Shown: positions 10,267 through 60,939, counted from the first letter of the stretch. The stretch: DNA of 64,000 bases from IMGVR_UViG_3300036760_000522:62001-126000; one strand, 5' to 3'. Notes: generated by a model not told the origin, from the sequence alone. Translations and numbers: made by a program.

Positions 10267-10635
10267 ATGACGTCTATTCAAACCGCTCTGGGAGAGTTCG
10301 TACGAGTCGCCAAGACCTTTCCAACAAATAAAGCGCTCAGGGACTACCTCAGCGAGCATCCAAATGCAGATGCTAACGCACACAAAGTTGTTCGCAGCCC
10401 CGGCCGACTTGACAGAATCAAAGACCCACATGACCGGGCAGAGGCTTGGCTGGAGAAGCAAAGGGAACAGAGAAAAGAGGAGTCCAAGGCTAAGCGCAAG
10501 GAGAAGAAACTTAAGAAGGACGAGGATGCCAAGGCAAACCCCGAGCCGTCCAAGAAGGAGGCCTCGACACTCAAATCAGCCTTAGACGCCTTTCAACACG
10601 TTGTTACTAAGCAAGCGTTGAGGCCCCTCCCGTGA
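10267..10635 (+). CDS. Small charged protein, putative internal head protein
   Basis: FPTNKALRDYLSEHPNADANAHKV module shared with 11806-12663; K/E-rich tail. Confidence 0.6.
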   Translation: MTSIQTALGEFVRVAKTFPTNKALRDYLSEHPNADANAHKVVRSPGRLDRIKDPHDRAEAWLEKQREQRKEESKAKRKEKKLKKDEDAKANPEPSKKEASTLKSALDAFQHVVTKQALRPLP

Positions 10636-11087
10636 ACAACATAGAGACCTCGACAGCACGGATTGTCCGGCGCTTTCTCGTTTTAGCTAGCCGCACGGAC
10701 TCCGGTGACCACAGTCCTGATCCCTACACGTATCGGGCTTTCTTGTCGGAGTTCGAGAAAGGTGAAGAGACAGGCTTAGAGCAGGGCGAAAGCATGATGC
10801 ACCAGGGCAAGGCTCGTGATGTAGACGTCGACATCGACAGTTGCGGCACCATCGTCAGCCAAACAGTTTGGGACCTCATGGAGATGGCCAAGCGCATGAA
10901 CGCGATTACGTCGCGAGGTCAGGTCATGGGTGTCAACGAAAGACGTCTGTCCGCCAAGATGAGTGGGATCCTCTCCACGTTGTTTTACTTCACAGGTCGA
11001 CAGAAGGGTCTCACGAAAGCCTTGAAGGAGACTGCCTATTCACCGACCCTGCCGAGTGCCCCGGAAGCACCTCGTGCTCGCGTTTGA
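10632..11087 (+). CDS. Hypothetical protein with N-terminal STARIVRRF motif
   Basis: GTGA overlap with the upstream gene; motif shared with neighbours. Confidence 0.6.
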   Translation: MNNIETSTARIVRRFLVLASRTDSGDHSPDPYTYRAFLSEFEKGEETGLEQGESMMHQGKARDVDVDIDSCGTIVSQTVWDLMEMAKRMNAITSRGQVMGVNERRLSAKMSGILSTLFYFTGRQKGLTKALKETAYSPTLPSAPEAPRARV

Positions 11088-11107
11088 CCGAAAAGGGACC
11101 TTTCCAA

Positions 11108-11809
11108 ATGAGTCAAGAGTCTGTCCAACGAATTGTAGACCGTGTGGTGGCTGCACGCATTGTGACAGCGCTCAAAGATCCAAATATTGTGTCCTTGAAC
11201 AGGGCACTGAAGACTATTCGAGCTGAGTCAGTCAAGTACTTGAACGACAAGATCAACAATCTGATCTGGAATGCAGGAAGCGTCTACGACTACATCGGTC
11301 GAGGATCACAATTTCGCGTTTTCGGCAGGACGTCGCCCGAGGCTAGCCCAGACTCGGCCACCCTTGAAGTCACCATCGTGTACATCAATCGTGATGCTCC
11401 AGATGACGCCCCCGTTCTCTACGAAGGGTCTGTAAGCGTTTACGGCAAAAATCAACGACAACTTGACGGGTCTCGAGTCGAAAAGGTATCGCTCGAAGAC
11501 TTGAAGAAGAATGCTGGAAAGATCTTGTTCGGCGATGTGATCAAGACGGTCAAAGACCACCTTGAAGGTTCTCTGGAGCGCGAGCTTGATCAAATCCGAG
11601 ACTACGCGTCAGAAGCTGAAACCGCGGCAATGCACGCAGACGAGCACTTGTCCGCGCTCAGGAAGCTGCTCGACAAGACCAAGAGTTTGGATACTGATGC
11701 CGGCGCGATCGCTAGACACGCTTCGGAAGCCTCAGGTTTCTTTAGGGACGCTGAAAGTGAAATGCGATACGTTGCTGATCTGATTCAGAAGATCCAAGCC
11801 ACTCGGTGA
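11108..11809 (+). CDS. Hypothetical protein with N-terminal SVQRIVDR motif
   Basis: ATG at 11108; helical C-terminus. Confidence 0.6.
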   Translation: MSQESVQRIVDRVVAARIVTALKDPNIVSLNRALKTIRAESVKYLNDKINNLIWNAGSVYDYIGRGSQFRVFGRTSPEASPDSATLEVTIVYINRDAPDDAPVLYEGSVSVYGKNQRQLDGSRVEKVSLEDLKKNAGKILFGDVIKTVKDHLEGSLERELDQIRDYASEAETAAMHADEHLSALRKLLDKTKSLDTDAGAIARHASEASGFFRDAESEMRYVADLIQKIQATR

Positions 11810-12663
11810 AGTACTTGGACGCTGATCTACTCCCGTCAGTTTATCAGTTCGAACGTGTGCTTCACCGTGAGAGTGTTCGACGTGTCGCTCGTCGATACGC
11901 AACGGAGTTTCCTTCTGAGTCCGCCAGGAAGCAGTACCTGAAGGAACATCCGAAAGCGGATCCCCACAAGCACACCGTCGCTCCTGAGAGTCGAGAGAAG
12001 CCAACATCAGAGGAAGGCGACAAGCCTGAGGAAGGCAAGAAACAAGAGAAGCCGAAAGGAAAGCCGAAGACCTTCCTCAAAGGCTTGGCCGAGAAAACCA
12101 AATCGTACTTGAGTGAGGCTTCGGAGGCGGTACAGAAATTTGTCTCGGATGGAGAGCACCGGTCCAAACTGCTGAGTGAAGCAGGAAAGTCTGTTCTCAA
12201 ATCGCCCAAAACTTACGCGAAGAGACTCGTAGAAACAGCCAAACACGAGGTGCACGAATTCAAGGAGGCTGGGGAGGCGCTTGCACATTTGGCGAAAGGC
12301 AAGAAACTTGATCCTGCACAAAAGAAGGTCTTGAAAACCGTTGCCATTCACATGGGGATCGCGGTTGCCGCAGCGGCTTTAACGTCAACAGGTGTTTTTG
12401 CAGGTGCTGCTGTATTCAGCAAAGGCCTGGCACAAAAGATCGCTCTCAAAGCCGCATTGAGGGCACTTGAGAACGTGCATCTACTACAAGAAATACACCA
12501 CATCGGCCACGGTGCCATGCATCTCCTGGCATCTGAGGAGGAAGAGGCCAGCCCTGAAGAAGCTTTCGCGGCTTTGGTGATGCAAAGCGTGTCCAAAGAA
12601 CTGGACGATCTGAGCGGCGACGACTTGTCCAAATACCTAGACGAGCTAGCTGACGACGCCTAG
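11806..12663 (+). CDS. Hypothetical protein with SVRRVARRY motif, FPS..YL.EHP.AD module and a hydrophobic segment
   Basis: Alternative GTG start at 11857 lies 12 nt after TTTAT. Hydrophobic AIHMGIAVAAAALTSTGVFAGAAVF stretch. Confidence 0.6.
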   Translation: MKYLDADLLPSVYQFERVLHRESVRRVARRYATEFPSESARKQYLKEHPKADPHKHTVAPESREKPTSEEGDKPEEGKKQEKPKGKPKTFLKGLAEKTKSYLSEASEAVQKFVSDGEHRSKLLSEAGKSVLKSPKTYAKRLVETAKHEVHEFKEAGEALAHLAKGKKLDPAQKKVLKTVAIHMGIAVAAAALTSTGVFAGAAVFSKGLAQKIALKAALRALENVHLLQEIHHIGHGAMHLLASEEEEASPEEAFAALVMQSVSKELDDLSGDDLSKYLDELADDA

Positions 12664-12936
12664 AACATCGTCCTCTTTCAAGATGATCAGGTCTTGTCCG
12701 TCGAGCTTCACTTCCGTGCCGGCGTATTTCGAGAAGAGTACAAGATCGCCTTGTTTTACTTCGAGCGGACGTACTCGTCCGTCTTCTAGGACCTTGCCAC
12801 TCCCTACTGCAAGGACGTCCCCCTCAGACGACTTCTGTTTGGCACTGTCTGGAATGATGATCCCTCCTTCAGACATGGTCTTCTCTTCGATGCGACGAAC
12901 AACTAGGCGGTCGTAAAGTGGCTTGATCGTAGTCAT
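12646..12936 (-). CDS. groES: Co-chaperonin GroES
   Basis: IKPLYDRLVV...GGIIIPDSAK...AVGSG...VKQGDLVLFSKYAGTEVK; full-length Cpn10. Confidence 0.97.
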   Translation of the reverse strand: MTTIKPLYDRLVVRRIEEKTMSEGGIIIPDSAKQKSSEGDVLAVGSGKVLEDGRVRPLEVKQGDLVLFSKYAGTEVKLDGQDLIILKEDDVLGVVS

Positions 12937-13019
12937 ACTCGTCCTCTAATTAACAAGCTGGCACACGTCAAGGGACCGTCTACCTTTACGCCGGTGTCGT
13001 GGTTGTGTAGAGAGCTTGG

Positions 13020-13502
13020 ATGTACGGCGACGCAGTAGAGGAGCTCCAAATCCGGCTGGTCGGCAAGACTGTCGCTAGTGTGGTGAAGTCCAGACGAGCA
13101 GAAACTGTGTGCCTCATCACGACCACCGATGGGGCTCGCTTTCATCTCCATGCGACCGAACTCGGCTCGTGGGTCGAAGACGATGTCGACACCACGGACG
13201 TGTTCACTGATTTGAATTTGTTTTGTACGTGGGTTGGGGAAAACGTGTCATTATCCGACGCGGTTGTCGTGACACGCGAAGCCACAAAGCTGTCTCTCAC
13301 AGTTAGAGGCAAGACGTTTGTGATTGACGCGGCCCTAGTTGCTGACCCTTGGGAGAGATCGGTGCTCTTGCACGAACAAGCGCCATTGTTCCTTGGGCAA
13401 GTTGTCGCTCTTGGGGACTGCTGGCGCATGTGGTTCCGCAAAAAATCAAACCTCGTGGGCGTAGAGGCCACAATCCCTGAGGAACTGAAATTTGATGATT
13501 GA
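13020..13502 (+). CDS. Hypothetical protein
   Basis: 160-aa ORF filling the gap, divergent from groES. Confidence 0.55.
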   Translation: MYGDAVEELQIRLVGKTVASVVKSRRAETVCLITTTDGARFHLHATELGSWVEDDVDTTDVFTDLNLFCTWVGENVSLSDAVVVTREATKLSLTVRGKTFVIDAALVADPWERSVLLHEQAPLFLGQVVALGDCWRMWFRKKSNLVGVEATIPEELKFDD

Positions 13503-13554
13503 CGGGGTCCGTGCTAGTCATCGCTGATTCATTTTTCGACACAGTAGTGCTAGG

Positions 13555-13821
13555 ATGGCTACCTCAGCACAACGGATCGTCACACGGTACAAAGCGGCCA
13601 GATCGTCACCTGCTGGCGTCGGTACAGACCTTTTGACTGTAGCCGTGCGGCAAGTCGACGACGCGTACCGCGCTACCCTCAAGTACGTGATCCGGGATCA
13701 GAATCCAGAAGCGTATTTCGACTCGATCAGCTACCTTCTGGAAGGCCAGATCAAAAAGTACCGACATTGGGTCGACGAATTGAGACGTCTCGAATTTCCT
13801 CTCTCGCAAAGGGGTCGTTGA
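13555..13821 (+). CDS. Small protein with N-terminal SAQRIVTRY motif
   Basis: Motif shared with neighbours. Confidence 0.6.
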   Translation: MATSAQRIVTRYKAARSSPAGVGTDLLTVAVRQVDDAYRATLKYVIRDQNPEAYFDSISYLLEGQIKKYRHWVDELRRLEFPLSQRGR

Positions 13822-14999
13822 AATTGGAAGCCTCAGCTGCTCGCGTTGCAAGCATGTACCGTCGAGGACGTCGCGATCTCAACTACGAGACTGCCAAAGA
13901 GGTCTTGGGCTTCCCTCCGGGTTCGAGTCCGACTGACGACGAAATTCGCCACGTACAGCGCGTAAAAATCGTCGAGCTTGGACACGATAGAGGAGGGGAT
14001 ATTGACGCTATCAAAGAAGTTAATGCTGCGGCAGAGATTCTTCTTGGCAAGTTAAAGCCAGACAGAGGTCCTGACGACATTGCGGAGCCGTACGTGCCTC
14101 GAGGTGGGCCACCACCTCCTGAAGAAAAACCGATCATCATCACCTTCCAGGAAGCTCTCGCCAAAATCAGTCTCCCGTCGTCAGTCACTTGGAAGTTCGT
14201 GACTGACAAGGCTCGCGGTCGGGGTTGGGCATCAGATGAGTCGGAATCAAGACACGTGGGCTACGTAGCCGTGGGGGAGACGCCAAATTTTTGGGTCTTT
14301 GTCGCGGTCGAGGAGCGTTCGTACCAAGCTTTCTTCGTCGGAGGTGGACCCAAGACACACGTCTTCCGGATGAAGGTCTACGAGCAACCAAATAAGGGAA
14401 CGCCAACGCCAGCTTTCTTGTACGGCGGCGTCATGAAGGCTTGGAAGTTTTTCGAGAAGCTCGACAAGCGCTTCAATTCCAAGATCCATCCTCTAGCTGA
14501 GGACTGGACCTTTCTAGATTTCGCGAAACGTTTTCCGCTGAGCCGAGCAACGACGATCAAAAACTGGCTCGTCGACACCGGTGTCGTCGAAGAAGCGACG
14601 CTTGCCAAACCACGCAAGATCAAGGTTGAGATCAAATACGTCAGATTACCTTCACACATGATGCCACCTGACGCGCCTCGCTCAGCAGAGGACCATTTCG
14701 TTTTGATCGTCAACGGCAAAGAGGATAATCTCTCTCCGAAAGATGATGAGGCTCTCTCCAAACTACGGATCGGCGGAAAGCGCTTTGCGGAACGGGTCTT
14801 CGGCGAATACCACTACGGTGGCGAGATTCGAGACTTGACACGCAATCGTGACGGGAAGACCATCATGAGCTGGATGGCAGAACATTTGATCCACCTACCA
14901 GAGTTCTTCAAGAACAGCCTTCTGACTGCTTCGGGCGGTAAGACCGCGACCGAGCGTGTCGCTGAACGTTTCAGGGGATCTTATGTCCACAGCCACTGA
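13818..14999 (+). CDS. Protein with a degenerate J-domain and motif copies at both ends
   Basis: AKEVLG...PTDDEIR...GHDRGGD...VNAAAEIL resembles a DnaJ J-domain (HPD replaced by GHD). TTG start overlaps the upstream stop. Confidence 0.6.
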   Translation: MKLEASAARVASMYRRGRRDLNYETAKEVLGFPPGSSPTDDEIRHVQRVKIVELGHDRGGDIDAIKEVNAAAEILLGKLKPDRGPDDIAEPYVPRGGPPPPEEKPIIITFQEALAKISLPSSVTWKFVTDKARGRGWASDESESRHVGYVAVGETPNFWVFVAVEERSYQAFFVGGGPKTHVFRMKVYEQPNKGTPTPAFLYGGVMKAWKFFEKLDKRFNSKIHPLAEDWTFLDFAKRFPLSRATTIKNWLVDTGVVEEATLAKPRKIKVEIKYVRLPSHMMPPDAPRSAEDHFVLIVNGKEDNLSPKDDEALSKLRIGGKRFAERVFGEYHYGGEIRDLTRNRDGKTIMSWMAEHLIHLPEFFKNSLLTASGGKTATERVAERFRGSYVHSH

Positions 15000-17900
15000 T
15001 GTGATGAGAGTCTTTCATTCTTCGGAAGACGAAGATGAAGTGGTTGGCGAATTCCAAGTCGCTGAGTACATCATTTTCCTGCTCGCCCTCGACACGTACA
15101 TGAGGTACGCTGAGGAATCTTCAGGAGTTGATGACATCGAAGACGCGATTATTCGACGAGGCTTGCAAATTCTGCGTCGGGCCGAAGCCGATCTCGAGAA
15201 CTATGGAAGCTTTCTAGAAGAGCATTTGTCGACTCCCGTCCAGAAACAAATGCTCAAGAGGGCTTTGTCGTTCAAGTCGTTCACCCCTAACGGCATGGCG
15301 CGTCGAGCATTGCAATTTCGGACCTTGCTATCCAGAGGCGGGGCACAAACAGTTCGAGCCGTTTTCGAATCCAACAAATACATCCGGCAGATGCGTGAAG
15401 CGATCGCAGCTTCGATGATGGAGGACGCGGACAAGGCTCTAGACATTTTTGCTGCAATGCCTCTCCGTAATTCACGGTTTCGTGTTTGGGTCGATGAGAG
15501 CGCAAAGCAAGCGGGCTCTGGTGAAAGCGCACCACAACCTGTTGAGGCAGCTTCGAACGAATCGTCGAGCGAAATCCGACAAGAGCTTCTGGTACAACAA
15601 GTCCAAAGCACAGTTGCCGTGGGAGCTGAAGCTGCTCGAGACGCCAAGGACTCACGATCAGCGCTCCTCGAGCAAACCGAGAATGAGGCGAGAGAAGCCG
15701 CCAAGCGGAGCATTGAGGTCAACCAACAGCGTGACGAGCCACTGACAAGATCCGAAGTCGTCGGTGTTGCAGCAGCGGCTGCTATGGCCGCAACAACTGA
15801 TCCGTCGAATCCTCAAAACATACCTGAGTCATTGAGGGCTCTTGACGACGAGCAACGAGCTGCTGCTCTGACCAACGGTCGCGTAGTTGTTGCAGCAGGA
15901 GCCGGCGCGGGAAAAAGTTTTACCTTGGTTCAGCGCGTCACCTACCTTGTGAAGGAACAGCGCGTAGGTCCTAGTCGGATTCTCGTAACGACCTTCAACA
16001 ACAAAGCCGCTGAAGAGTTGAAGGAGAAGATCGGGAAATCCCTTGGTGGACAGGTACTGCAACAAATGTCAGTCGGCACCATGCACTCGCTCTTCAGTCG
16101 GTTCATCTCAGAGCACGGGACACCTGAAGAACGCCAAGCAATGCAGGCTCCCAGGTTCATGCGTGACGGCCTCTCCATCGCAGGGGCCGTCCAAAGGATG
16201 TGGAGCGACTGCTACGGCACAAAGCGACCAACGCCACGCATGAGGACGATGTTGGCCTACAAGTCTCAGTGGTCAGGCAACGGCATCACGCCAGCGGAAG
16301 CTTTGGCCACGGTGCCGCCGAGAAAAGAAGCACAAGACGCCGCGACTTGGTACACCATGTACGAGGGGCTCAAAGGGACACTGCCCGACTGGAGGCCTCC
16401 TTGTCAGTCGAATTCCTATACAAGGTTCATGTCACAGAACCGAGGCGATGGAAGTCGACTCGGAGACTTCTCCGACATGCTCCTCATCTTCCGTGACATT
16501 TTGAAGCGATCGCCTGTCGTACAGTCTGCCGTACAAAAGATGTTTGACCACGTGATCGTGGATGAAGCACAGGACCGAAATACCATCATGGCTGAGATCA
16601 TTGAAATGATCTCAGGACACATCAACGAAGATTCACAAGATAAATCTCTGTGGATTGTTGGAGATGACAAGCAGTGTGTACACGTAGACACATTGGTAGA
16701 CGTTCCTGGGAATCGCAGAGTCAGAGCAGGTGGCTTGAGAGTTGGGGCACAGGTATTGTCTTACCGTAACAGCAAGGTCACACCCCAAATTGTCGAATCT
16801 GTAACGAAGTCAGACTGGGCTTACGGATTCAAGGTGGTTACGGCTTCAGGTAGGTCTCTGACGATGTCCCCCAATCACAGGATTTGGGCAAGCGAGATCA
16901 ATCCTGAGATCGAAGACCGTATTGTGTACTTGATGCACAGGCCCAATTTAGGCTTCCGTGTGGGGGTCACAACTAACGGGAGGACCAAGAAAGGCAGACG
17001 GAGCATTCGCAGTCGAATGGCGATGGAGAATGCCGACAAGTTGTGGATCCTGAAGTTGTGCGGGGACTACGAAGAAGCCCTCCTTGAGGAGAGTTCTTAT
17101 TCGTTGACCTACGGGATCCCGACTGTTGTATTCAACGGCGTGTGGCGAGACCTGAACCAGGACCGCTTAGATGAAGTTTTCCGGAGATTTGGCAAGAATG
17201 GTATGAAATTGTTGGAAGCATCCAACTTGGATTTCGACCACCCGCATGTGACGGCCTACGCCTCGGGTAACGGTCGCGTAGCACGACGTGTCATTCAGAT
17301 GTTGGCACACCACTCTAAGGGCACTTTGGTATCCTTAGAGTGGACGGGAGATGACTTGGATTCTCCTCTCAAAGCCGCGCAGGTGATTTTTCAAAGCACA
17401 GGTCCTCGACGGAGATTGCGCAAACACTGTAACAGCTATCGGGATGCCATTTCCTTTGCAACAACTTTGAAAGGTCTGACAGGAGCTATCATCAACCGTC
17501 GTCTGTCTCGGCATGAGTTGGAGGAGCCCTACCAATTGATCCCTGCTGCCGGGCTATTTCCTGGCATGCGACTAGTGGTTCTAGAAGGGGAGGATGCTGT
17601 GGATTCTGAAGAGATCACTTCTATCGACAGAGTGGAGGGCTCTTTCGTTGACCTGAGTGTCGATGATGCCTCAAACTTTTTCGGTAATGGGATCCTCAGC
17701 CACAACAGCATCAATGCATTCCAAGGTGCACGTGCTGAGTTGTTCACCTCATTGTGGGATCAACCTGGGTGGAAGACTAGAGCCATCACAACCAACTACC
17801 GATGTGAGCCTGAAATCGTTGACGCAGCGAACGCTTTGATCGCAAACAATGAAGATCAGATTCCGATGGAGGCTAGGGCCGATCCCCGCAAAGTTCGCGG

Positions 17901-19173
17901 CGTCGGTAGCATCAAAGTCTTCAATCCACCTGATGAAGCGTCGGCGGCTCTTGATACTGTCGAGGCCATCAAGCAAAATTTGGCTCTCGGAGCCAATGTC
18001 ACAGATCACGCTATTTTGTGTCGAACCAACAAAGAGCTTCACGCGTTTGAAACTGCGTGCATCATTCGTGGCGTTCCCTACGCACGCAAAGGGGCGTCGA
18101 GCTTTTTCGGATCCCCAGAAACCAAAGCAGTCCTTGGTTATGTACAACTCGTGACCGGAACAGATCCCATCAAGATGCAGGGAGCTTTGGCCGATGCCAT
18201 CAACAAACCCAATCGCTTCTTCATTGATCCAAAGAAGGGCGCAGAGGCTGTTGAGAGGGCTATCGTCGACTACGCACGGACAAAGCAACAAGACCCTAAG
18301 ACTATTGATCCTGTCGAAGCGTTGTCTGATCGCGGTTTCGTTAACGGACTTGCTCGTCGCCTTCTCGACTTGAAGGGTGGACGTGGTCGGGATTTTGATC
18401 ACAAGCTCCGTGAGCTGGGAGACGCTCTGAAGGAGATGCGTGCTTTGGCACAGACAGGGGGCTACACGACTCGAGACTTGTTCGATCAAATCTTGGGACT
18501 TGAAGGGACTGCAATCGTTGGCGGGAAGTTCATTGAGCAGACTTTCCGTGAAACACTGCAAGCTGATTTGAAGGATCGTGTCGGCGACGAAACGGATGAC
18601 GATGAAGAAGAGGAAGACGAAACTGATCCGACTCGCGGACTCGGCAACGTCTCATTCCTCTACAAGCTCTCTGAAATTGACCCCACTGACGAAGACGATG
18701 CCCTGACACCTCCCACAACTCCCGCTGGTTTCAAATCCAAGATGGAACGTTACGCGGCTAGAATGCGGGATCTTCGTACCGACGTCACTGCGTGGTACAA
18801 GAAACAGTCAGCTCTTCCACCCGAACAAAGAACGCCTCCACCAGGAACTTACGTAGGGACAGTGCATAGTGTAAAAGGCGCTCAATGGCCCAACACTTAT
18901 GTGTCAATGCCGGCTGGTAAGTTTCCTTTCAACATCCCAAAACGTCCAGGTGAACCGCCGCCTGATCCAGATGAAGTCAAAGACCAAGTCGAGGGAGAGC
19001 GTCGCCTTGCTTACGTCGCCTTGACTCGCGCTGCTAAGAATTTGACCATCATTTGCCCGGGCGAAGTGGGAGGAAAGCCCGCTGGCGTCAGCGTGTTCGT
19101 CGCTGAGGCAAAACTCAAAGTCGGAGAGAATGTCGTGGCGATCGGAACTGAATCACCAACGGCGGAGGGTTGA
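14983..19173 (+). CDS. UvrD/PcrA-like SF1 helicase with N-terminal extension and intein
   Basis: AGAGAGKS, TTFNNKAA, GTMHS, VDEAQD, VGDDKQ|SINAFQGA, TNYRC, LCRTN, TVHSVKG, ERRLAYVALTRA. Confidence 0.93.
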   Translation: MSTATDVMRVFHSSEDEDEVVGEFQVAEYIIFLLALDTYMRYAEESSGVDDIEDAIIRRGLQILRRAEADLENYGSFLEEHLSTPVQKQMLKRALSFKSFTPNGMARRALQFRTLLSRGGAQTVRAVFESNKYIRQMREAIAASMMEDADKALDIFAAMPLRNSRFRVWVDESAKQAGSGESAPQPVEAASNESSSEIRQELLVQQVQSTVAVGAEAARDAKDSRSALLEQTENEAREAAKRSIEVNQQRDEPLTRSEVVGVAAAAAMAATTDPSNPQNIPESLRALDDEQRAAALTNGRVVVAAGAGAGKSFTLVQRVTYLVKEQRVGPSRILVTTFNNKAAEELKEKIGKSLGGQVLQQMSVGTMHSLFSRFISEHGTPEERQAMQAPRFMRDGLSIAGAVQRMWSDCYGTKRPTPRMRTMLAYKSQWSGNGITPAEALATVPPRKEAQDAATWYTMYEGLKGTLPDWRPPCQSNSYTRFMSQNRGDGSRLGDFSDMLLIFRDILKRSPVVQSAVQKMFDHVIVDEAQDRNTIMAEIIEMISGHINEDSQDKSLWIVGDDKQCVHVDTLVDVPGNRRVRAGGLRVGAQVLSYRNSKVTPQIVESVTKSDWAYGFKVVTASGRSLTMSPNHRIWASEINPEIEDRIVYLMHRPNLGFRVGVTTNGRTKKGRRSIRSRMAMENADKLWILKLCGDYEEALLEESSYSLTYGIPTVVFNGVWRDLNQDRLDEVFRRFGKNGMKLLEASNLDFDHPHVTAYASGNGRVARRVIQMLAHHSKGTLVSLEWTGDDLDSPLKAAQVIFQSTGPRRRLRKHCNSYRDAISFATTLKGLTGAIINRRLSRHELEEPYQLIPAAGLFPGMRLVVLEGEDAVDSEEITSIDRVEGSFVDLSVDDASNFFGNGILSHNSINAFQGARAELFTSLWDQPGWKTRAITTNYRCEPEIVDAANALIANNEDQIPMEARADPRKVRGVGSIKVFNPPDEASAALDTVEAIKQNLALGANVTDHAILCRTNKELHAFETACIIRGVPYARKGASSFFGSPETKAVLGYVQLVTGTDPIKMQGALADAINKPNRFFIDPKKGAEAVERAIVDYARTKQQDPKTIDPVEALSDRGFVNGLARRLLDLKGGRGRDFDHKLRELGDALKEMRALAQTGGYTTRDLFDQILGLEGTAIVGGKFIEQTFRETLQADLKDRVGDETDDDEEEEDETDPTRGLGNVSFLYKLSEIDPTDEDDALTPPTTPAGFKSKMERYAARMRDLRTDVTAWYKKQSALPPEQRTPPPGTYVGTVHSVKGAQWPNTYVSMPAGKFPFNIPKRPGEPPPDPDEVKDQVEGERRLAYVALTRAAKNLTIICPGEVGGKPAGVSVFVAEAKLKVGENVVAIGTESPTAEG
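16675..17706 (+). mobile_element. Intein (344 aa) in helicase motif III
   Basis: Starts CVHVDTLV, has block B TMSPNHRIW, ends NFFGNGILSHN before Ser+1. Removal restores GDDKQSINAFQGA. Confidence 0.92.
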
Positions 19174-54464: not shown

Positions 54465-54502
54465 CCTGATTCAGACACCTCATAAAAGGACGTGTCAGCT
54501 AA

Positions 54503-55090: not shown

Positions 55091-55092
55091 GA

Positions 55093-55121
55093 CGATCCTC
55101 CTTTCGGTTTTTGGAGGATCG
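55093..55121 (-). promoter_or_regulatory. 9-bp hairpin occluding the Shine-Dalgarno of the HNH gene
   Basis: Minus strand: CGATCCTCC-AAAAACCGAAA-GGAGGATCG-TC-ATG. Confidence 0.65.
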
Positions 55122-56360
55122 CTACTTCAGGACCTCCTCGAAGTCAGCTACCTGTTCCTCCGACAGTTTGTTCAAACAGTAAAAAGACCCCATCTCGCAG
55201 AAGTTTTCTTCCGGGTTCTTGGATGCGTACTGGGTGACAAACCCTGATGATTTGTCGCCGACGATGTCATCAGTTGTGACACCGAGGTAGTTCTTTGCGT
55301 AGGTTTCAATGGGGACCTTGAGTATGAATTTCGGTGCTTCATCCTTCAAAACAAGGTGTACGGTGCGAGACCTGAGGTCGACCATTCTGACCACGAGTGC
55401 CTCTCCCTTGTACACGATCTCGTCACCTTTTGACGGTACAGGCAAACGCTCTCGCTTAGCGTCTTCGACGCTTTCCGAAGCTCGGCGACATTTTCTGTAA
55501 AGCTCATCGATCTTCCTGTCCTTTCCAGACAAGAACTTCCGTTGTAAACGGTGAAAGAGCTCGTGAAGCACTACCTGTAGGGTGTCAACAGAAACTCGAA
55601 TCCCAGCTCGAACAAAGATCTCGTCGCTCGAGTGCAGATAGAACGCAAGCACGTTGCTTTTTCCAACTTTGCGACTGACCTGGACGTTCCCATAGCAAAC
55701 CTTGCCGAAGCCTTTACTCGTGATGAGGGTCGCGGCTTTCTGAACTGTTTCCGCCGCTGCCGACATAATGGCTTCGTTGAATCCACCTGTGTTGACGAGA
55801 GAGAAGGGCCCTGCTTTGATCTTGTGTGATTCGTCTAGAGGCTTACCTTTGGACAACGCCTCAAGGATCACTGCGTGCTGTCCACGGATCTCGGACAGCT
55901 GTCTCAAATAGTTAGTGGCTGCGGCGTCGTATTGGTCTAGAGGATTGCCGCGCAACCGTATGTTTTTTGACTTTTGTTTGGAGGCCCAGTACCGACTCAC
56001 CTGTTCGACTTTGCGACGAAGAGCCGTGGGCAAACTGAACTGCTGGAGAATAGCTAGCGTCAGGTCCCAAATGTCGCGAAACCAAACGTAGTAACGGTAA
56101 GCCGAAAGCCCGAGCATCTCGCGGAAAACACGCTCCATCGAGAAAACTTCATTCCAAAGAGGCTTCTGCTCCTCTGAGTTCGCGTCTCGCGCCCGGATCG
56201 CTTTAATCTCGGAAGTCAGTTGCTGGAGTTTCTGGGCATCCCGCTCCAACTTGGCGAAGTCGTTTAGATGCTGACCTATCGTGTTGGACAGTTGCGTGGG
56301 GTCAGCGATTGCGTCCCCACGCTTGTACCGCACAATGATGGCGTCGATGATGTCTGTCAC
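55122..56360 (-). CDS. Zincin-like metallopeptidase domain protein
   Basis: HELFH plus distal VTQYASKNPEENFCE. Confidence 0.7.
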   Translation of the reverse strand: MTDIIDAIIVRYKRGDAIADPTQLSNTIGQHLNDFAKLERDAQKLQQLTSEIKAIRARDANSEEQKPLWNEVFSMERVFREMLGLSAYRYYVWFRDIWDLTLAILQQFSLPTALRRKVEQVSRYWASKQKSKNIRLRGNPLDQYDAAATNYLRQLSEIRGQHAVILEALSKGKPLDESHKIKAGPFSLVNTGGFNEAIMSAAAETVQKAATLITSKGFGKVCYGNVQVSRKVGKSNVLAFYLHSSDEIFVRAGIRVSVDTLQVVLHELFHRLQRKFLSGKDRKIDELYRKCRRASESVEDAKRERLPVPSKGDEIVYKGEALVVRMVDLRSRTVHLVLKDEAPKFILKVPIETYAKNYLGVTTDDIVGDKSSGFVTQYASKNPEENFCEMGSFYCLNKLSEEQVADFEEVLK

Positions 56361-56425
56361 GACGGATCCAGTTCAATAAAAGGAAAGGACTTGTTACCTG
56401 ATCCCCTCGTAAGAGGGACCCTACT

Positions 56426-56797
56426 ATGACGACTGTTGTATTAATCGTTGATGACGAGCACTTCGCGCTCCACGCTCTAGTGAAAAGTCTGGCTTGTGAT
56501 CACTACAAAGTCATGACGGCAAAGAGTGGTGAGGCAGCACTCAAACTGATCCGAAGCCACTTGGGCGAATCCATCAAACTCCTACTACTCGATTGGTCAC
56601 TGCGGGACATGAGCGGTCTGACTCTAGCAGAGGAAGCCAAGAAATTGATCCCCGACGTGAAAATCCTCTACGTCTCGGGCTACGCCGCAAGTGACAAGTC
56701 GCTAGAAAGTTGTTGGATCACCAAACCGTTCGACCAAAAGGAGCTACGTGCCCGCGTTTTGCGGGAGCTGAAAATTGGGGTGAGCGACGGGAATTGA
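56426..56797 (+). CDS. Stand-alone CheY-like response regulator
   Basis: LIVDDE, LLLLDW, VSGY, TKPF. Confidence 0.9.
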   Translation: MTTVVLIVDDEHFALHALVKSLACDHYKVMTAKSGEAALKLIRSHLGESIKLLLLDWSLRDMSGLTLAEEAKKLIPDVKILYVSGYAASDKSLESCWITKPFDQKELRARVLRELKIGVSDGN

Positions 56798-56847
56798 ACC
56801 CGCCTGAAACTTGGTCCACATCCAAGCGCCCTCACCAGAAGGCTCAC
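56776..56847 (-). pseudogene. tRNA-His(GTG), 5' acceptor strand lost
   Basis: D, anticodon and T arms, C73 and CCA present; the 5' end is fused to a truncated HNH ORF. Confidence 0.75.
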
Positions 56848-57118
56848 ACTTGCCACCCAAAAGGCTTATAGCAAACTCCTTGAAAAGGTAACGTCTAACC
56901 TTTTGTCTACATGACATGCAGAGTTTGTATAGGTTAGGCCTTGCACAGACCGCGCACAGTTTGGTTGAGGCTGTCTGACGTTGCGGGTATTCTACCTTGT
57001 GCCCCCGCCGAAATGGGGAGCACGTGAGACATTTTTTCCGACTACCGAGATTTCTCAACTTGCCGTCCACACGCACCATAAACGGGAACTTATTACCGCA
57101 ATCCAAACAGGTGAGCAC
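56844..57118 (-). pseudogene. Truncated zinc-finger/HNH endonuclease
   Basis: Several CxxC pairs, then AISLLGGKC, where the HNH core would start, runs straight into tRNA-His. Confidence 0.6.
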
Positions 57119-57144
57119 ACATGTGCACGACACCGAGAATCATT

Positions 57145-57221
57145 TGGCATCCCAGGATGGATTCGAACCACCAGCCGTCGAGTTAGAAGCTCGCCGCACG
57201 GTCCAATCGTGCTGCTGGGAC
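57145..57221 (-). tRNA. tRNA-Arg(TCT)
   Basis: Cloverleaf, loop CTTCTAA, CCA encoded. Confidence 0.9.
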
Positions 57222-57254
57222 AAATTCATTTATGGTCCTTCAAGGGCAAGGCTT

Positions 57255-57566
57255 ATGTATTCCTACGACCGACGCAAGACTGCGGCTGTGGACAAGGTTC
57301 CTATCTTCAACAAGTTTTCCTTGCAACTCACGACCGGTCAGGTCGAAAAGATGATACAGAAGCACTACGAGATCGAGGAAGGATCCCTAGAGTTCAGACC
57401 TGCCACAACGCATCGTGACACCGTTCATGTGGACTTCTTCTACAAACTGGCCGGCAAAGATGTCCAAAGAAGTAACGGCGTAGGATCAGGTACTGTGGTC
57501 CTACGGGCAGAGCATCAAGGGAAGCAGATCCAGATCACAGCATTTGTGAACATCGACGACAACTGA
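57255..57566 (+). CDS. Small protein beginning MYSYDRRKTAA, inserted antisense in the tRNA array
   Basis: ATG at 57255; TTTAT upstream. Confidence 0.6.
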   Translation: MYSYDRRKTAAVDKVPIFNKFSLQLTTGQVEKMIQKHYEIEEGSLEFRPATTHRDTVHVDFFYKLAGKDVQRSNGVGSGTVVLRAEHQGKQIQITAFVNIDDN

Positions 57567-57572
57567 ACGTTG

Positions 57573-57643
57573 TAGCGAGCGAGGGACTCGAACCCTCTCC
57601 GGCGCCGTATGAAAGCACTGGTCCTCCCTGGACCGAGCTCGCC
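57573..57643 (-). tRNA. tRNA-Met or Ile2 (CAT)
   Basis: Cloverleaf, loop TTCATAC, no encoded CCA. Confidence 0.8.
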
Positions 57644-57654
57644 AATTTGGTGTT

Positions 57655-57728
57655 TGGCTGGGGCGCCAGGGATCGAACCTGGATCAACTGGTCCAAAGCC
57701 AGCCGTCCTACCTTTAGACGACACCCCA
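57655..57728 (-). tRNA. tRNA-Gln(TTG)
   Basis: Cloverleaf, loop CTTTGGA, CCA. Confidence 0.92.
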
Positions 57729-57733
57729 AAAAT

Positions 57734-57815
57734 TGGCGGAGGTCGAATCGAACGCCACACCCGAAAGTGCCATCAGTTTAGCAAACTGCGGATCACCCAG
57801 TGATCGTCAACCTCC
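57734..57815 (-). pseudogene. tRNA-Ser(GCT) with about 4 nt missing from the T-stem 3' strand
   Basis: Loop TTGCTAA, long variable arm; TGGCG-TTCGATT-C lacks its pairing partner. Confidence 0.7.
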
Positions 57816-57822
57816 ATTAATT

Positions 57823-57905
57823 TGGCGGAGAGGACAGGAATCGAACCCGCTACGGAATTACCGCGACCGTTTTCAAGACGGTTTGCCACCATTAGCCACC
57901 TCTCC
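57823..57905 (-). tRNA. tRNA-Ser(TGA)
   Basis: Loop CTTGAAA, long variable arm, GCCA end. Confidence 0.88.
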
Positions 57906-58227
57906 AAAAGACCTTGAGCTGTTCGCTCATTGAGACACGAGACCGTTGTTCTTGTCTCGTCTGATGATTCCACGAGTCTTTCGACCCGGTTGCCTTGTGA
58001 GGCTTACAAAACAGACAACCGCCTCGAGCGTTTTTTCGTTTCTTGCGTTTGTGGTGCACAGGATCTCCTTGCCGCCGTCAGCGGCTTGTTAGTGATCCTG
58101 CGATGCTTCATCATTTCGACTTTTGGTTGTTGTAGGAAGGGCAGCCTGGTCTCTTGCATTTCAATTTCTCCACCTGTCTTCAGACGGGTGGAGACTTCAG
58201 GGTACCACAGTTTACAAGGACCGGGTC

Positions 58228-58548
58228 CTAGTTTCGCTTGAGAGCTTCTCTGAGAAACTCTTTTGTTGCGTTGATTAGCTCAACGTCACTGACTAGCGCA
58301 TCGACAAATTCAGGAGCCCGCAAGTGCAGCACACGGGTCGTGATAGCCGGTAGCCCGCGCTCCTTCACGTATTCGTACATAGCAAGCACCAACATCATGG
58401 CGACGCCACGAGGAGCAGATTTTTCTTGACCGGCACTAGCCAACAACAGAGGATAAAGGTACTGACGAAAATGCGATTGATCGTTGATCTTCAGTAGTCG
58501 CTCAAGCATCTCTTCACGGCTCGGTAGCGTGATGTCAGTTTCGATCAT
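58228..58548 (-). CDS. Hypothetical protein
   Basis: Likely start MIETD at 58548; the longer ORF call overlaps tRNA-Ala. Confidence 0.55.
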   Translation of the reverse strand: MIETDITLPSREEMLERLLKINDQSHFRQYLYPLLLASAGQEKSAPRGVAMMLVLAMYEYVKERGLPAITTRVLHLRAPEFVDALVSDVELINATKEFLREALKRN

Positions 58549-58595
58549 TACGCAAACAACACCAAACTTCAGATTTTTGTTGATCACCCGGACAA

Positions 58596-58626
58596 GTAAC
58601 AGTAGAAAACGGTCGGGAATTGAAGG
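58596..58626 (+). repeat. Dispersed CRISPR-repeat-like unit, copy B
   Basis: GTAACAGTAGAAAACGGTCGGGAATTGAAGG, preceded by an AT-rich flank and abutting a tRNA 5' fragment. Confidence 0.65.
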
Positions 58627-58638
58627 TGCTACAGGGAC
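58627..58638 (-). pseudogene. 5' stub of a tRNA (GTCCCTG-TA-GCA)
   Basis: Starts 3 nt after the CCA of tRNA-Ala and resembles the 5' end of tRNA-Arg in this window. Confidence 0.5.
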
Positions 58639-58641
58639 ATT

Positions 58642-58717
58642 TGGTGGAACCGAAGGGAATTGAACCCTCAACCTCTTGTGTGCAGGACAAGCGCTCTCCC
58701 AATTGAGCTACGGCCCC
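58642..58717 (-). tRNA. tRNA-Ala(TGC)
   Basis: G3:U70, loop CCTGCAC (C33), CCA. Confidence 0.9.
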
Positions 58718-58727
58718 AAGATTTGTT

Positions 58728-58805
58728 TGGTGCTCCCACGGGGCGACGATCCCCGTTTTCCGCCTTGAAAGGGCAGTGTCCTAACCAAACGTAGACGATG
58801 AGAGC
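58728..58805 (-). tRNA. tRNA-Glu(TTC)
   Basis: Loop CTTTCAA; atypical T-loop ATCGTCG; CCA. Confidence 0.85.
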
Positions 58806-59057
58806 AGTGGTGTGTTTGGCGTCCAATGGCCTCTAGGAGGCGTAGAGATCCCAATTTTTCTGCACCGCTTTTTGACAGCTGAAGAAGAAACTCCGAACTC
58901 CTTGGTTGGACACGCAGCATGTGGCCGAACAAGCCAGGAGTAATGTCGCGAGCATCACATTCTATGACAAGGCACTACTCGACACGGAGCACAAGGATAT
59001 CTACTTGCAAGCTCTCGGGGACTTCTATCACCCCGAGACGCCCGCCCTGTGAGACAG

Positions 59058-59130
59058 TAGTGCTCCAGAGACTCGAACTCTGCACGATCCGCTTATCAGA
59101 CGAACCAGGTCAACCCGACCGTCGAGCACC
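59058..59130 (-). tRNA. tRNA-Ile(GAT), atypical D arm
   Basis: Loop CTGATAA; T arm CAGAG-TTCGAGT-CTCTG. Confidence 0.75.
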
Positions 59131-59175
59131 AAAACTCAATTCATGCTAAAATCACGAAATGGTCACACTTACAAG

Positions 59176-59248
59176 CAGGGGTGAACGGAATCGAACCGTC
59201 TCGACAAGGGTTTTGGAGGCCCTCCGGCTTACCCACAGCCACACCCCT
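59176..59248 (-). tRNA. tRNA-Trp(CCA)
   Basis: Loop CTCCAAA; acceptor AGGGGTG/CACCCCT. Confidence 0.85.
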
Positions 59249-59419
59249 AGACCGTCAATTTACATCTTTGTTGCTCTTCTCGTTGCAGCCAACGCAGCCA
59301 TTTTTTGGTACGGGTGGCGCCAGTATCAAAAGCAAGAGGAAGGTGTCGTCATCCAATGCACTGTGCGAGCGGCACAATTCCACTATCGTTTGTCCGACGT
59401 CTGTACGGGCCCGTACAGC

Positions 59420-59857
59420 TCAGATAGAACCTGTGCCGAGAAGTTGGATCTTTGTCAGCAGCAGTAACAAGTACTTGATCGCCAGCCCATTGCACAAAAT
59501 GTGCATGAGGTTGTCAGTGATGATGAGCAACCAAGTGCTCAACCAAGGTGGGAGATTGGCGGGATAACCTGTACCCGAGCAATCCTTCCAAGAAGGATTG
59601 CTACCTGGAGGCGCCAAAAAGTTCTTGAACCAACAAACGTGCCGGGCGAGTCGCCAACGATCAATCACGAAATGTGTACCGGCAATCGTGAGGAGCACTT
59701 CGACGCTCTGACTCAACACTAAAAACGGCAACGTGTACAGCGCGACATGCGCGAGTGCGGCTCGGGTCTTAGTGACTTTTTCCGTTGCCATCCACTGGCT
59801 TTGGAGGACGTAGTCACCGATCACGTGCAGCACAAGTTGGTCGGCAGTTACAAGCAT
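59420..59857 (-). CDS. DUF3307-like membrane protein
   Basis: HVIGDYVLQSQWMA...H...HFVIDRW...DNLMH. Confidence 0.8.
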   Translation of the reverse strand: MLVTADQLVLHVIGDYVLQSQWMATEKVTKTRAALAHVALYTLPFLVLSQSVEVLLTIAGTHFVIDRWRLARHVCWFKNFLAPPGSNPSWKDCSGTGYPANLPPWLSTWLLIITDNLMHILCNGLAIKYLLLLLTKIQLLGTGSI

Positions 59858-59941
59858 GATTAGACAACACCGAAAGGAGAGGCCTCCCCTCAAGGCCCTT
59901 TACTCAGAAAATCATCAACACCATAGGTACCTCCTTTCGAT

Positions 59942-60015
59942 TGGCGCTGCGTACGGGAATCGAACCCGTTTCGCCTCTTAGACAGAGAGGTCGCGATCCA
60001 ATCGCGTCACGCAGC
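59942..60015 (-). tRNA. tRNA-Asp(GTC)
   Basis: Loop CTGTCTA (U37), GCCA end. Confidence 0.88.
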
Positions 60016-60049
60016 ATTTGAAACACGGTGTTACACCTGACGATATCGC

Positions 60050-60646
60050 ATGATCGGACTCACCAGGCGACAAGAAATGGTCCTGAACGTCGTTCGGGAT
60101 CGTATCAGGAAATTCGGTTACCCGCCTTCCCTGCGAGAACTTTGTGTCGCTTTAGATTTACACTCCACGCACGGCATCAGTCAACACCTGGACGCACTCG
60201 AACGCAAAGGCCACATCCAGCGTACACGTCAAGGCGCGAGTCGCGGGATCAAGCTCATTGAAAGCACCACAGTGTCAGAAACTCAAACGGTCAAAGTTTA
60301 TTCGCGAACTTTCGAAGAAGGGAACGTTGTCGACACCATCCAAGTCGGTTCCTCAATGATCAACAAGCCTGTCGTCGGGTTCCTGATGCGCGGAGACGCA
60401 CTCGAAAGATCAGGGATTCTAGATGGAGACTATTTGCTCGTTCAACGCGGTGCCTTCATTACTTCTGGGAGCTTGGTTTGCTTGCACGTTGGCGATGAGG
60501 TCTGCGCCAGGTACTACCACAAGGAGAGCGACTACGTGCGATTCGATGCCGCTCACCCAGAAAAGTCCTCCATACTTGTCCGGAACGCAGACTTCAAGGC
60601 GTCGATGCTTGAGGGCCTCGTCCATAGTGTTTATCGGAAGTGCTAG
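60050..60646 (+). CDS. lexA: LexA-like repressor lacking autoproteolysis residues
   Basis: LTRRQ...GYPPSLREL...HLDALERKG winged HTH; S24-like domain with GDAL instead of GDSM. Confidence 0.85.
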   Translation: MIGLTRRQEMVLNVVRDRIRKFGYPPSLRELCVALDLHSTHGISQHLDALERKGHIQRTRQGASRGIKLIESTTVSETQTVKVYSRTFEEGNVVDTIQVGSSMINKPVVGFLMRGDALERSGILDGDYLLVQRGAFITSGSLVCLHVGDEVCARYYHKESDYVRFDAAHPEKSSILVRNADFKASMLEGLVHSVYRKC

Positions 60647-60648
60647 GT

Positions 60649-60939
60649 ATGGAAGCTAAACGAGTCGTAGCCCGGTTCCGTTCCTTGAAGGAAGCAGCGA
60701 AGCCGTCGACCGAAGCTGTCTCGGAGATTCAAGCAGCGATCGAAGCTCTCAAGAGGATCGCTAAAGGTAGCGGCAACCCGAAGCGTCTCTTGTTTTCAGC
60801 AGTTTGGAGTCTTGGAGCCGCTGCGGAGAAGATGGGGCAAGAAACGAGGGTATCCTCAGCGCTCTATCACGCTGCTGGCATCGTTAACCAGACTTGGTCG
60901 GTCCAAGACACCCGCGACTACTTCTCGAAAGGCGCCTAA
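60649..60939 (+). CDS. Small protein with N-terminal AKRVVARF motif
   Basis: ATG at 60649; TTTAT 14 nt upstream. Confidence 0.6.
   Translation: MEAKRVVARFRSLKEAAKPSTEAVSEIQAAIEALKRIAKGSGNPKRLLFSAVWSLGAAAEKMGQETRVSSALYHAAGIVNQTWSVQDTRDYFSKGA

What the first reader, a model, noticed from the sequence alone, without database searches (positions are those of the whole stretch)
10267..60939. Shared short peptide tag on unrelated proteins: candidate capsid cargo-targeting or processing signal
Seen: a [ST]xxR[IV][VA]xR[FY]-like motif near the termini of otherwise unrelated ORFs: STARIVRRF (10632), SVQRIVDRV (11108), SVRRVARRY (11806), SAQRIVTRY (13555), SAARVASMY and C-terminal ATERVAERF (13818), EAKRVVARF (60649). 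Weaker variants are IIDAIIVRY (56360) and TATDVMRVF (14983). [KR]xA motifs (KTA, RVA, RYA, KEA, KQA) often follow or border domains, including in 1794, 10267 and 57255; YSYDRR (57255) resembles YTYQR (end of 1794). Known: T4 internal proteins use an N-terminal capsid targeting sequence removed by the prohead protease. Inference: a modular tag that loads varied cargo (J-domain protein, metallopeptidase, Dps, possibly helicase) into the head for injection.
Basis: partly seen in the sequence, partly recalled or inferred. Interest (0 to 1): 0.8.

Follow-up and report, generated by a model that had tools for sequence, protein, structure and literature searches.

The report
Shared terminal peptide tags, huge phage
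Unrelated proteins of this 300-kb uncultured phage really do start with the same short peptide, which is half of an undescribed tag found in over a thousand huge-phage protein families and which sits next to the phages' own ClpX unfoldase gene, so it looks more like a chaperone/protease docking tag than the proposed capsid-loading signal.

Summary
R[IV][VA]xR[FY] occurs 5 times in the window's proteins against 0.13 expected, and 4 of these are at N-termini against 0.02 expected. The codons differ between copies, so the conservation is at protein level. Orthologues in other metagenomic phages keep the motif.

It is the first half of a two-part module: an amphipathic helix (..RVAARF..) followed by a box (AMEFPTEEALKKYLKEHPKADKSKHTV). 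A profile of the module finds 1205 protein clusters. All are metagenomic, many lie on 200-530 kb phage contigs, and none was found in cellular genomes or cultured phages. Fused domains include ferritin, Zeta toxin, ADP-ribosyltransferase, HD, topoisomerase IB and zincin peptidase.

The [KR]xA claim is chance, and the helicase variant is not conserved.

Function is inferred only. Tagged genes crowd around a phage-encoded ClpX that keeps its zinc-finger N-domain: 16 of 83 same-strand genes within 1 kb carry the tag, against 5 of 540 genes beyond 3 kb. The core set is a zincin peptidase, a J-domain protein and the 11806 family. The helix resembles E. coli SspB's ClpX-docking tail, ALRVVK.

My best reading is a ClpX docking or degradation tag (about 0.4). 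Capsid targeting stays possible (about 0.2), because 73% of modules have an [AGS]-x-E junction.

The parts
10267..10635 (+). 122-aa protein with the full two-part module. Variant helix RVAKTF at nt 10303-10320, box PTNKALRDYLSEHPNADANAHKV at nt 10321-10389, then a Lys/Glu-rich tail.
   Evidence: hmmsearch with the module profile, E 5.5e-13. blastp to 11806 and to L002:15150. Source gene call of 122 aa.
10632..11087 (+). 151-aa protein with a helix-only N-terminal tag, STARIVRRF, at nt 10650-10676.
   Evidence: No Pfam or PHROG hit. Source gene call of 151 aa.
11108..11809 (+). 233-aa protein with a helix-only N-terminal tag, SVQRIVDRV, at nt 11120-11146.
   Evidence: Source gene call of 233 aa.
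11806..12663 (+). 285-aa protein with the full module in its long form (YQFERVLHRESVRRVARRY). Helix core at nt 11881-11898, box EFPSESARKQYLKEHPKADPHKHTV at nt 11905-11979. It belongs to the family that lies directly after ClpX in related huge phages.
   Evidence: Module profile E 3.2e-18. Orthologues 45-58% identical sit right after ClpX in L012, L022/L058, L061, L069, L075 and L078. AF2 model of residues 1-75.
13555..13821 (+). 88-aa protein with a helix-only N-terminal tag, SAQRIVTRY, at nt 13564-13590.
   Evidence: Top score (19.8 bits) with the matrix built from other genomes.
13818..14999 (+). 393-aa J-domain-like protein whose HPD motif has degenerated to GHD. N-terminal tag SAARVASMY at nt 13833-13859 (TTG start). 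A second copy, ATERVAERF, at the C-terminus, nt 14946-14972.
   Evidence: The tag is kept in 9 of 13 orthologues and lies upstream of the called start in L004. In the AF2 model the tag is detached and low-confidence (pLDDT below 50 for residues 1-19), followed by a J domain and an alpha/beta C-domain. The C-terminal copy parallels L003:3636 and the end of L036:7810.
55122..56360 (-). 412-aa HExxH zincin-like metallopeptidase with a degenerate N-terminal tag, IIDAIIVRY, at nt 56325-56351.
   Evidence: Weak Peptidase_Mx1 hit. Orthologues flank ClpX, and all start with clear tags such as MNDRIVARFL and LALRVANRFL.
60649..60939 (+). 96-aa protein with a helix-only N-terminal tag, EAKRVVARF, at nt 60652-60678.
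1794..2429 (+). 211-aa ferritin/Dps-like protein ending in the second terminal motif, KYTYQR, at nt 2409-2426.
   Evidence: Pfam Ferritin 4.9e-10. Motif 2 enrichment. Its orthologue P0141 (40% identity) carries the full module at its C-terminus.
57255..57566 (+). 103-aa ORF between two tRNA genes, starting with the second terminal motif, MYSYDRRKTAA, at nt 57255-57287.
   Evidence: The same N-terminus is seen in L140:3144 (same genome), L023, L026 and L065.

Best explanation
The shared peptide is a short docking tag that can sit at different positions in a protein. It is an amphipathic helix with core R-[VI]-[AV]-x-R-[FY], usually within the first 5-30 residues.

In its full form the helix is followed 22-24 residues later by a small beta-alpha-beta box (EFP[ST]xEAxxxYLxxHPxADxxxHxV) whose invariant residues are Tyr, His, Asp and His. 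Huge phages attach the helix, or helix plus box, to many unrelated proteins. The core set is a zincin metallopeptidase, a J-domain co-chaperone and the 11806 family. Other carriers are ferritin/Dps-like proteins and toxin-like enzymes.

I think the most likely reader of the tag is the N-terminal zinc-finger domain of ClpX, either the phage's own or the host's. The tag would then tether these proteins to the unfoldase, as partners or adaptors, or mark them for timed ClpXP degradation. The second terminal motif (YSYDR) would be another such signal.

Shown here: the motif, its conservation, its modular distribution and its clustering around ClpX genes. Inferred only: that ClpX binds it, and what follows from binding.
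For: Enrichment and protein-level conservation in the window. Orthologues of the J-protein and of the zincin peptidase keep the tag at about 30-45% identity.

A module profile finds 1205 clusters at E<=1e-3. In 110 of the top 150 the box lies within 60 residues of the N-terminus, with the helix at a fixed spacing; 45 of 150 have 2-4 copies, and some copies are C-terminal.

In 30 non-redundant huge-phage ClpX loci, 16 of 83 same-strand genes within 1 kb of ClpX carry the N-terminal motif, against 5 of 540 genes more than 3 kb away (odds ratio 12, Fisher p 4e-9). A full module lies 0-3.7 kb downstream of ClpX in 16 of 36 such loci, against 0 of 44 control ClpX loci.

The phage ClpX keeps the C4 zinc finger and an LGF loop. 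E. coli SspB ends in RGGRPALRVVK; compare ALRVAARF, TLRVAARY and LALRVANRF in tagged proteins. E. coli Dps starts MSTAKLVKSK; compare STARIVRRF. The SspB tail binds the ClpX zinc-binding domain whatever its position in a polypeptide (PMC12373786), which fits the N-terminal, internal and C-terminal copies here.

AF2 places the tag of the J-protein as a detached, low-confidence helix.
Against: No binding or degradation was tested. The adjacency to ClpX comes from related genomes that share synteny, so the loci are not independent.

No ClpX gene lies in the 72 kb of this genome that I could read (contig 53.8-126 kb), and I could not establish whether one lies elsewhere.

The residue before the Arg is not consistently Leu as it is in SspB. 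By my recollection, not checked here, the SspB tail binds as an extended strand, whereas this tag is predicted helical.

The strongly conserved box, with its metal-ligand-like invariant residues, is not explained by this model. In 73% of modules the helix-box junction matches a prohead protease site.
Confidence: 0.4

Rival explanations
1. Capsid-targeting propeptide. The N-terminal helix would bind the scaffold or core of the prohead and load varied cargo. The prohead protease would then cut at the [AGS]-x-E junction, and the cargo would be ejected into the host with the DNA.
For: Strong N-terminal bias. The junction is [AGS]-x-E in 143 of 196 modules, which matches the AXE site of the SPN3US prohead protease; that phage has short 20-24 residue propeptides (PMC10052503). 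Fused domains look like ejected effectors: a DRAT-like ADP-ribosyltransferase plus peptidase in L002:15150, and Zeta toxin, GNAT, HEPN and RelA/SpoT-like domains. One tagged protein matches a 'minor head protein' PHROG. The small Lys/Glu-rich proteins resemble internal head proteins. The tag was found only in phage contigs.
Against: Copies occur at C-termini and inside proteins. Asp replaces Glu at the junction in 18% of modules, and gene 10267 has Thr there. Helix-only proteins have no conserved cleavage site. Tagged genes lie beside ClpX, helicase and replication genes, not recognisable head genes. Many carriers are barely longer than the module (65-95 aa), which leaves no cargo. A J-domain co-chaperone and a peptidase that flanks ClpX are odd cargo.
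Confidence: 0.2
2. The helix is simply the first structural element of a small folded domain (helix plus box) with a function of its own, for example metal or haem binding, nucleic-acid binding or oligomerisation. It would bind some partner other than ClpX or the capsid. The helix-only copies would be decayed or variant domains.
For: Invariant Y-x3-H-P-x-A-D-x3-H in 84 aligned modules. AF2 predicts a compact beta-alpha-beta box with pLDDT about 80-89. There are weak sub-threshold hits to the haemophore family MHB in 11 of 86 proteins. Many carriers consist of the module alone. The module repeats 2-4 times within single proteins. Ferritin fusions exist.
Against: The helix occurs without any detectable box on at least five window proteins and on the J-protein and peptidase families. 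The box also occurs behind other helix types. So the two halves are separable. No structural or sequence relative with a known function was found.
Confidence: 0.3
3. Residue of common descent. On this view the clustered genes at 10.2-15 kb are diverged tandem duplicates that happen to keep a similar start, with no shared signal function.
For: Seven carriers lie in one 5-kb run. Genes 10267 and 11806 are related over about 100 residues.
Against: Beyond the tag, the carriers show no similarity to each other. The same tag heads unrelated families (J-domain, zincin, ADP-ribosyltransferase, ferritin, Zeta toxin) across hundreds of genomes, and orthologues at 30-45% identity keep it.
Confidence: 0.05

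Closest known systems
ClpX recognition and tethering peptides: the SspB C-terminal ClpX-binding tail (ALRVVK) and N-terminal ClpX signals such as that of Dps (STAKLVK)
   Same: Short, basic-hydrophobic peptides at protein ends or, for the SspB tail, at any position, carried by unrelated proteins. There is local sequence resemblance. A ClpX with its zinc-finger domain is encoded next to the tagged genes.
   Different: The phage tag is longer and predicted helical, and it often comes with a conserved 25-residue box. Binding to ClpX is untested. The Leu before the Arg is not conserved.
T4 capsid targeting sequence on internal proteins and Alt; N-terminal propeptides of giant phages (phiKZ, SPN3US) cut after AXE
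   Same: An N-terminal peptide shared by unrelated proteins, some of them host-modifying enzymes. There is an [AGS]-x-E junction after the helix in 73% of full modules.
   Different: Copies also lie at C-termini and inside proteins. There is no sequence similarity to the T4 sequence. The genes are not near head genes. Neither virion presence nor cleavage has been shown.
Polyvalent proteins of phages and conjugative elements (Iyer et al. 2017, cited in PMC7824862)
   Same: The same repertoire of fused effector-like domains (ADP-ribosyltransferase, zincin peptidase, GNAT, HEPN) on phage proteins.
   Different: Here most carriers are small, single-domain proteins that share a defined terminal tag, not giant multi-domain chains. 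The tag itself is not among the Pfam or PHROG families matched.
Encapsulin cargo-loading peptides
   Same: A short peptide that marks varied cargo, including ferritin-like proteins, for an HK97-fold shell.
   Different: Those peptides are typically C-terminal, Gly/Ser/Leu-rich and unrelated in sequence (from my own knowledge). No shell gene is linked here.

Membership tests
T4-type capsid targeting sequence / giant-phage head propeptide | Located at the extreme N-terminus only | tested here: not met
   Mostly N-terminal: 110 of the top 150 hits. But there are clear C-terminal and internal copies: the C-terminus of window gene 13818, P0141, L036:7810, and proteins with 2-4 copies.
T4-type capsid targeting sequence / giant-phage head propeptide | Followed by a prohead protease site with Glu at P1 (LxE, or S/A/G-x-E) | tested here: inconclusive
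   [AGS]-x-E is present in 143 of 196 full modules and [AGS]-x-D in 35. It is absent in window gene 10267 (AKT|F), and helix-only proteins have no fixed site.
T4-type capsid targeting sequence / giant-phage head propeptide | Carrier proteins are present in virions with the tag removed | not testable with these tools
   No cultured relative exists in the phage collection.
T4-type capsid targeting sequence / giant-phage head propeptide | A prohead protease and head scaffold are encoded by the same genome and linked in function | not tested
   No head genes were recognised in the 72 kb read. The rest of the 301-kb contig was not read.
ClpX docking or degradation signals (SspB-tail-like or N-terminal ClpX motifs) | Short basic-hydrophobic peptide resembling ALRVVK or STAKLVK | tested here: inconclusive
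   There is resemblance (ALRVAARF, TLRVAARY, STARIVRRF), but it spans only 4-5 residues and the Leu position varies.
ClpX docking or degradation signals (SspB-tail-like or N-terminal ClpX motifs) | A ClpX with its zinc-binding N-domain is available and linked to the tagged genes | tested here: met
   This is met in relatives: zf-C4_ClpX plus AAA_2, conserved Cys residues, and tagged genes enriched within 1 kb. No phage ClpX lies in the window itself; a host ClpX is presumed.
ClpX docking or degradation signals (SspB-tail-like or N-terminal ClpX motifs) | Physical binding to the ClpX N-domain, or ClpXP-dependent turnover | not testable with these tools
   This needs peptide binding and degradation assays. 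No multimer folding tool was available.
Any curated protein family (Pfam-A, PHROGs) covering the module | Significant match of the tag region to a curated model | tested here: not met
   There are no hits for the window carriers. There are only sub-threshold MHB and HrpK1 hits and the unannotated phrog_5432. The PDB profile search gives only a 14-residue match to Legionella LegA15.
J-domain (DnaJ) family, for gene 13818 | HPD tripeptide between helices II and III | tested here: not met
   The window copy reads GHDRGGD; P0003 and P0004 also have GHD. Most orthologues have HPDRGGD, and four carry PF00226. The fold is J-like in the AF2 model.

The most novel reading that the evidence does not exclude
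Huge phages may run their own peptide-addressed protein-handling system. At least two terminal codes (the RVAxRF helix with or without the HPxAD box, and YSYDR) would route dozens of unrelated proteins to a phage-encoded ClpX. That ClpX would work with a tethered zincin peptidase and a J-domain co-chaperone. The system would either give toxic takeover enzymes a built-in lifetime or feed unfolded cargo into the capsid. On this reading the ClpX explanation and the capsid explanation are two halves of one pathway.
Probability: 0.15. Interest if true: 0.9.

Novelty: new variant of a known kind. Interest (0 to 1): 0.7.

Why it matters
Terminal address peptides such as degrons, adaptor tails and capsid-targeting sequences are known, but no curated family I searched covers this one. 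It is very common: 1205 clusters at 50% identity, on many contigs of 200-530 kb. It labels the poorly understood accessory proteins of huge phages.

If ClpX reads it, huge phages carry a self-contained proteostasis module (ClpX, zincin peptidase, J-protein and tagged clients). If the capsid reads it, the tag gives a ready list of ejected effectors.

Either way the tag is a practical handle. One profile search sorts hundreds of orphan proteins into a single functional class. The tag could also serve as a portable peptide for controlled degradation or packaging in laboratory strains.

Tried and rejected
DNA or RNA element rather than a peptide: rejected. Synonymous codons differ between copies.

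Paralogy of the carriers: rejected. All-against-all blastp finds nothing beyond the tag, except between 10267 and 11806.

Tat-like signal (RRF-L in 10632): only one copy fits, so I dropped it.

[KR]xA as a processing site: chance.

Helicase variant: not conserved in the orthologue.

Known relatives. Megablast and tblastn against 50,697 cultured phage records found nothing. A scan of 185,579 species genomes with module patterns gave no confirmed hit.

Structure. AF2 of the module gives a helix plus a small beta-alpha-beta box, but Foldseek against the PDB finds nothing. The PDB sequence profile gives only a 14-residue match to LegA15.

Does this phage encode ClpX? Not within contig 53.8-126 kb. 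A ClpX homologue search listed no protein from the 301,550-bp contig among its best 120, which settles nothing.

Literature searches for a described tag of this kind found nothing relevant.


Full report
**What the window is.** The 64-kb window is positions 62,001-126,000 of IMGVR_UViG_3300036760_000522, a 301,550-bp uncultured phage contig. It carries:
- 14 tRNA genes;
- a baseplate-J protein;
- an intein-bearing UvrD helicase;
- a LexA-like repressor;
- a ferritin/Dps-like protein;
- an actin homologue of the Volactin family.

It has no close relative among cultured phages.

All are in + strand ORFs at the stated places, and a seventh copy lies at 60652. Five of these lie a few residues after a plausible start codon. 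The source's own gene calls agree for 10267, 10632, 11108 and 11806.

Shuffling 62 window proteins gives 0.13 expected core matches against 5 observed. At N-termini it gives 0.02 expected against 4 observed. A scoring matrix built only from proteins of other genomes ranks the window's copies first. The copies use different synonymous codons, so selection acts on the peptide and not on the DNA. Apart from the tag, the carriers are unrelated to each other, and most have no Pfam or PHROG match.

**Conservation in relatives.** The J-domain-like protein (13818) has 13 homologues at about 30-45% identity. Nine of them start with M-x(2-4)-A-x-R-V-A-x-R-[FY]. One of the others has the motif just upstream of its called start.

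The window's copy is therefore a decayed true member. The helicase variant is not conserved.

The C-terminal copy on 13818 parallels two other cases. One is a separate small gene in L003 that starts MRTAAQRVVRQF. The other is a J-protein in L036 that also ends with the helix.

**The tag is half of a larger, widespread module.** In 11806, in 10267 and in a 760-aa protein of L002 that combines an ADP-ribosyltransferase with a peptidase, the helix is followed by a second conserved block.

A profile of this region finds 1205 representative proteins at E<=0.001 among 1.84 billion. The consensus is ..FEDALLARRVAARFLVAMEFPTEEALKKYLKEHPKADKSKHTVKKP. Among the top 150 hits:
- the box lies within 60 residues of the N-terminus in 110;
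- the helix sits 22 or 24 residues upstream of the box's histidine in most copies where it was detected;
- 45 proteins carry 2-4 copies.

Tyr, His, Pro, Ala, Asp and His are invariant in 84 aligned modules. AF2 predicts a long helix followed by a small beta-alpha-beta unit, with mean pLDDT 71 overall and 78-89 across the box. Nothing similar was found in the PDB by fold or by sequence, apart from a 14-residue match in Legionella LegA15.

All carriers are metagenomic, and many lie on contigs of 200-530 kb. Neither cultured phages nor 185,579 species genomes gave a hit.

Domains fused to the module include ferritin, Zeta toxin, HD phosphohydrolase, topoisomerase IB, ADP-ribosyltransferase, GNAT, HEPN and RelA/SpoT-like. 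An orthologue of the window's ferritin carries the module at its C-terminus.

**A second terminal motif.** Y[STN]Y[EQD]R occurs 10 times against 0.35 expected, and in 9 of the 10 cases at or near the N- or C-terminus. A further copy lies in the same genome just upstream of the window, MGHYTYDRRTAAT. Another lies in a small gene directly before ClpX in L065. By contrast, [KR]xA is at chance level.

**What reads the tag?** Gene neighbourhoods gave the strongest lead. In one large group of huge phages the order is CN-hydrolase, then ClpX, then tagged proteins. The window's 11806 family is the gene right after ClpX, and the 56360 peptidase family flanks ClpX.

I then selected loci by ClpX alone:
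- 16 of 36 huge-phage ClpX loci have a full module 0-3.7 kb downstream on the same strand, against 0 of 44 other ClpX loci.
- 16 of 83 same-strand genes within 1 kb of ClpX carry the N-terminal helix, against 5 of 540 genes beyond 3 kb (p 4e-9).

These loci share ancestry, so the test overstates independence. The phage ClpX keeps its C4 zinc finger and an LGF loop.

E. coli SspB docks on that zinc-finger domain through its tail...PALRVVK (sequence checked). That tail works at any position in a polypeptide (PMC12373786). E. coli Dps begins MSTAKLVK; I recall it as a ClpXP substrate recognised through its N-terminus, but I did not check this here. Tagged proteins read ALRVAARF, TLRVAARY and STARIVRRF. 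In the AF2 model of the J-protein the tag is a detached, low-confidence helix ahead of the J domain, as expected for a docking peptide.

**Weighing the readings.** I favour a ClpX docking or degradation tag at about 0.4. The reasons are:
- the link to ClpX;
- the proteostasis flavour of the core carriers (peptidase, J-protein);
- the freedom of position;
- the existence of a second terminal motif.

The capsid-targeting reading keeps about 0.2. The junction between helix and box is [AGS]-x-E in 73% of modules, which is the site used by the SPN3US prohead protease (PMC10052503). The fused enzymes also resemble ejected effectors.

Against the capsid reading:
- 18% of junctions have Asp, and gene 10267 has Thr;
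- helix-only proteins lack a fixed cleavage site;
- many carriers are hardly longer than the module;
- the neighbouring genes are not head genes.

A third reading, at about 0.3, is that helix plus box is a small functional domain, perhaps metal-binding, aimed at an unknown partner. The invariant Tyr, His, Asp and His residues are not explained by either of the first two models.

No ClpX gene lies in the 72 kb of this genome that I could read, and whether the rest of the genome has one is unresolved.

**Verdict.** The module appears to be undescribed, and it is worth a bench test.

Noticed in passing
window 2442-3455 (+); also L013, L035 and 7 other loci: An actin homologue of the Volactin family (Pfam PF25216, E 8.5e-70) is conserved in this clade of huge phages. 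It lies next to the ferritin-like gene here and recurs within 10 kb of module genes in 9 loci.
   Followed up: partly
window 13818-14999: The J-domain of this protein has GHD in place of the HPD tripeptide, as do P0003 and P0004, while other orthologues keep HPD. This subgroup may no longer stimulate Hsp70.
   Followed up: partly
window 14983-19173 and 15-737; L140:6740-8944: Inteins interrupt the UvrD-type helicase (Intein_splicing match spanning residues 596-908) and the large protein that runs into the window's start. Inteins are also common in ClpX and other genes of related huge phages.
   Followed up: no
window 13540-13557 and 60634-60651: The two genes 13555 and 60649 share the sequence AGTGCTAGG(T)ATGG across their start codons. 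This could be a common translation-initiation context or chance.
   Followed up: no
PDB 7XQL / 7EW8 / 7KJ6 (Legionella LegA15), residues 432-445: The box profile matches TKEYLKQHPNADPK near the C-terminus of the Legionella effector LegA15 (E 0.012). This could be chance or a shared mini-motif.
   Followed up: partly
L012, L022, L036, L043, L047, L057 and L058-L092: There is a conserved gene order in many huge phages: CN-hydrolase, a small gene, ClpX, tagged proteins, then DUF1848. The ClpX-flanking zincin peptidase might act as a tethered protease partner.
   Followed up: partly
window 57145-63333: Fourteen tRNA genes, all on the minus strand, are interleaved with small plus-strand ORFs. One of these ORFs (57255) carries the YSYDR terminal motif. 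A LexA-like repressor (60050-60646) overlaps the start region of the tagged gene 60649.
   Followed up: no
L036:7810-9135 and L036:9137-10558: Helix and box are split across two adjacent ORFs. The J-protein ends with ..ITRNVVARVL, and the next gene starts with the box only. This may be a frameshift, a sequencing error or a true split.
   Followed up: no
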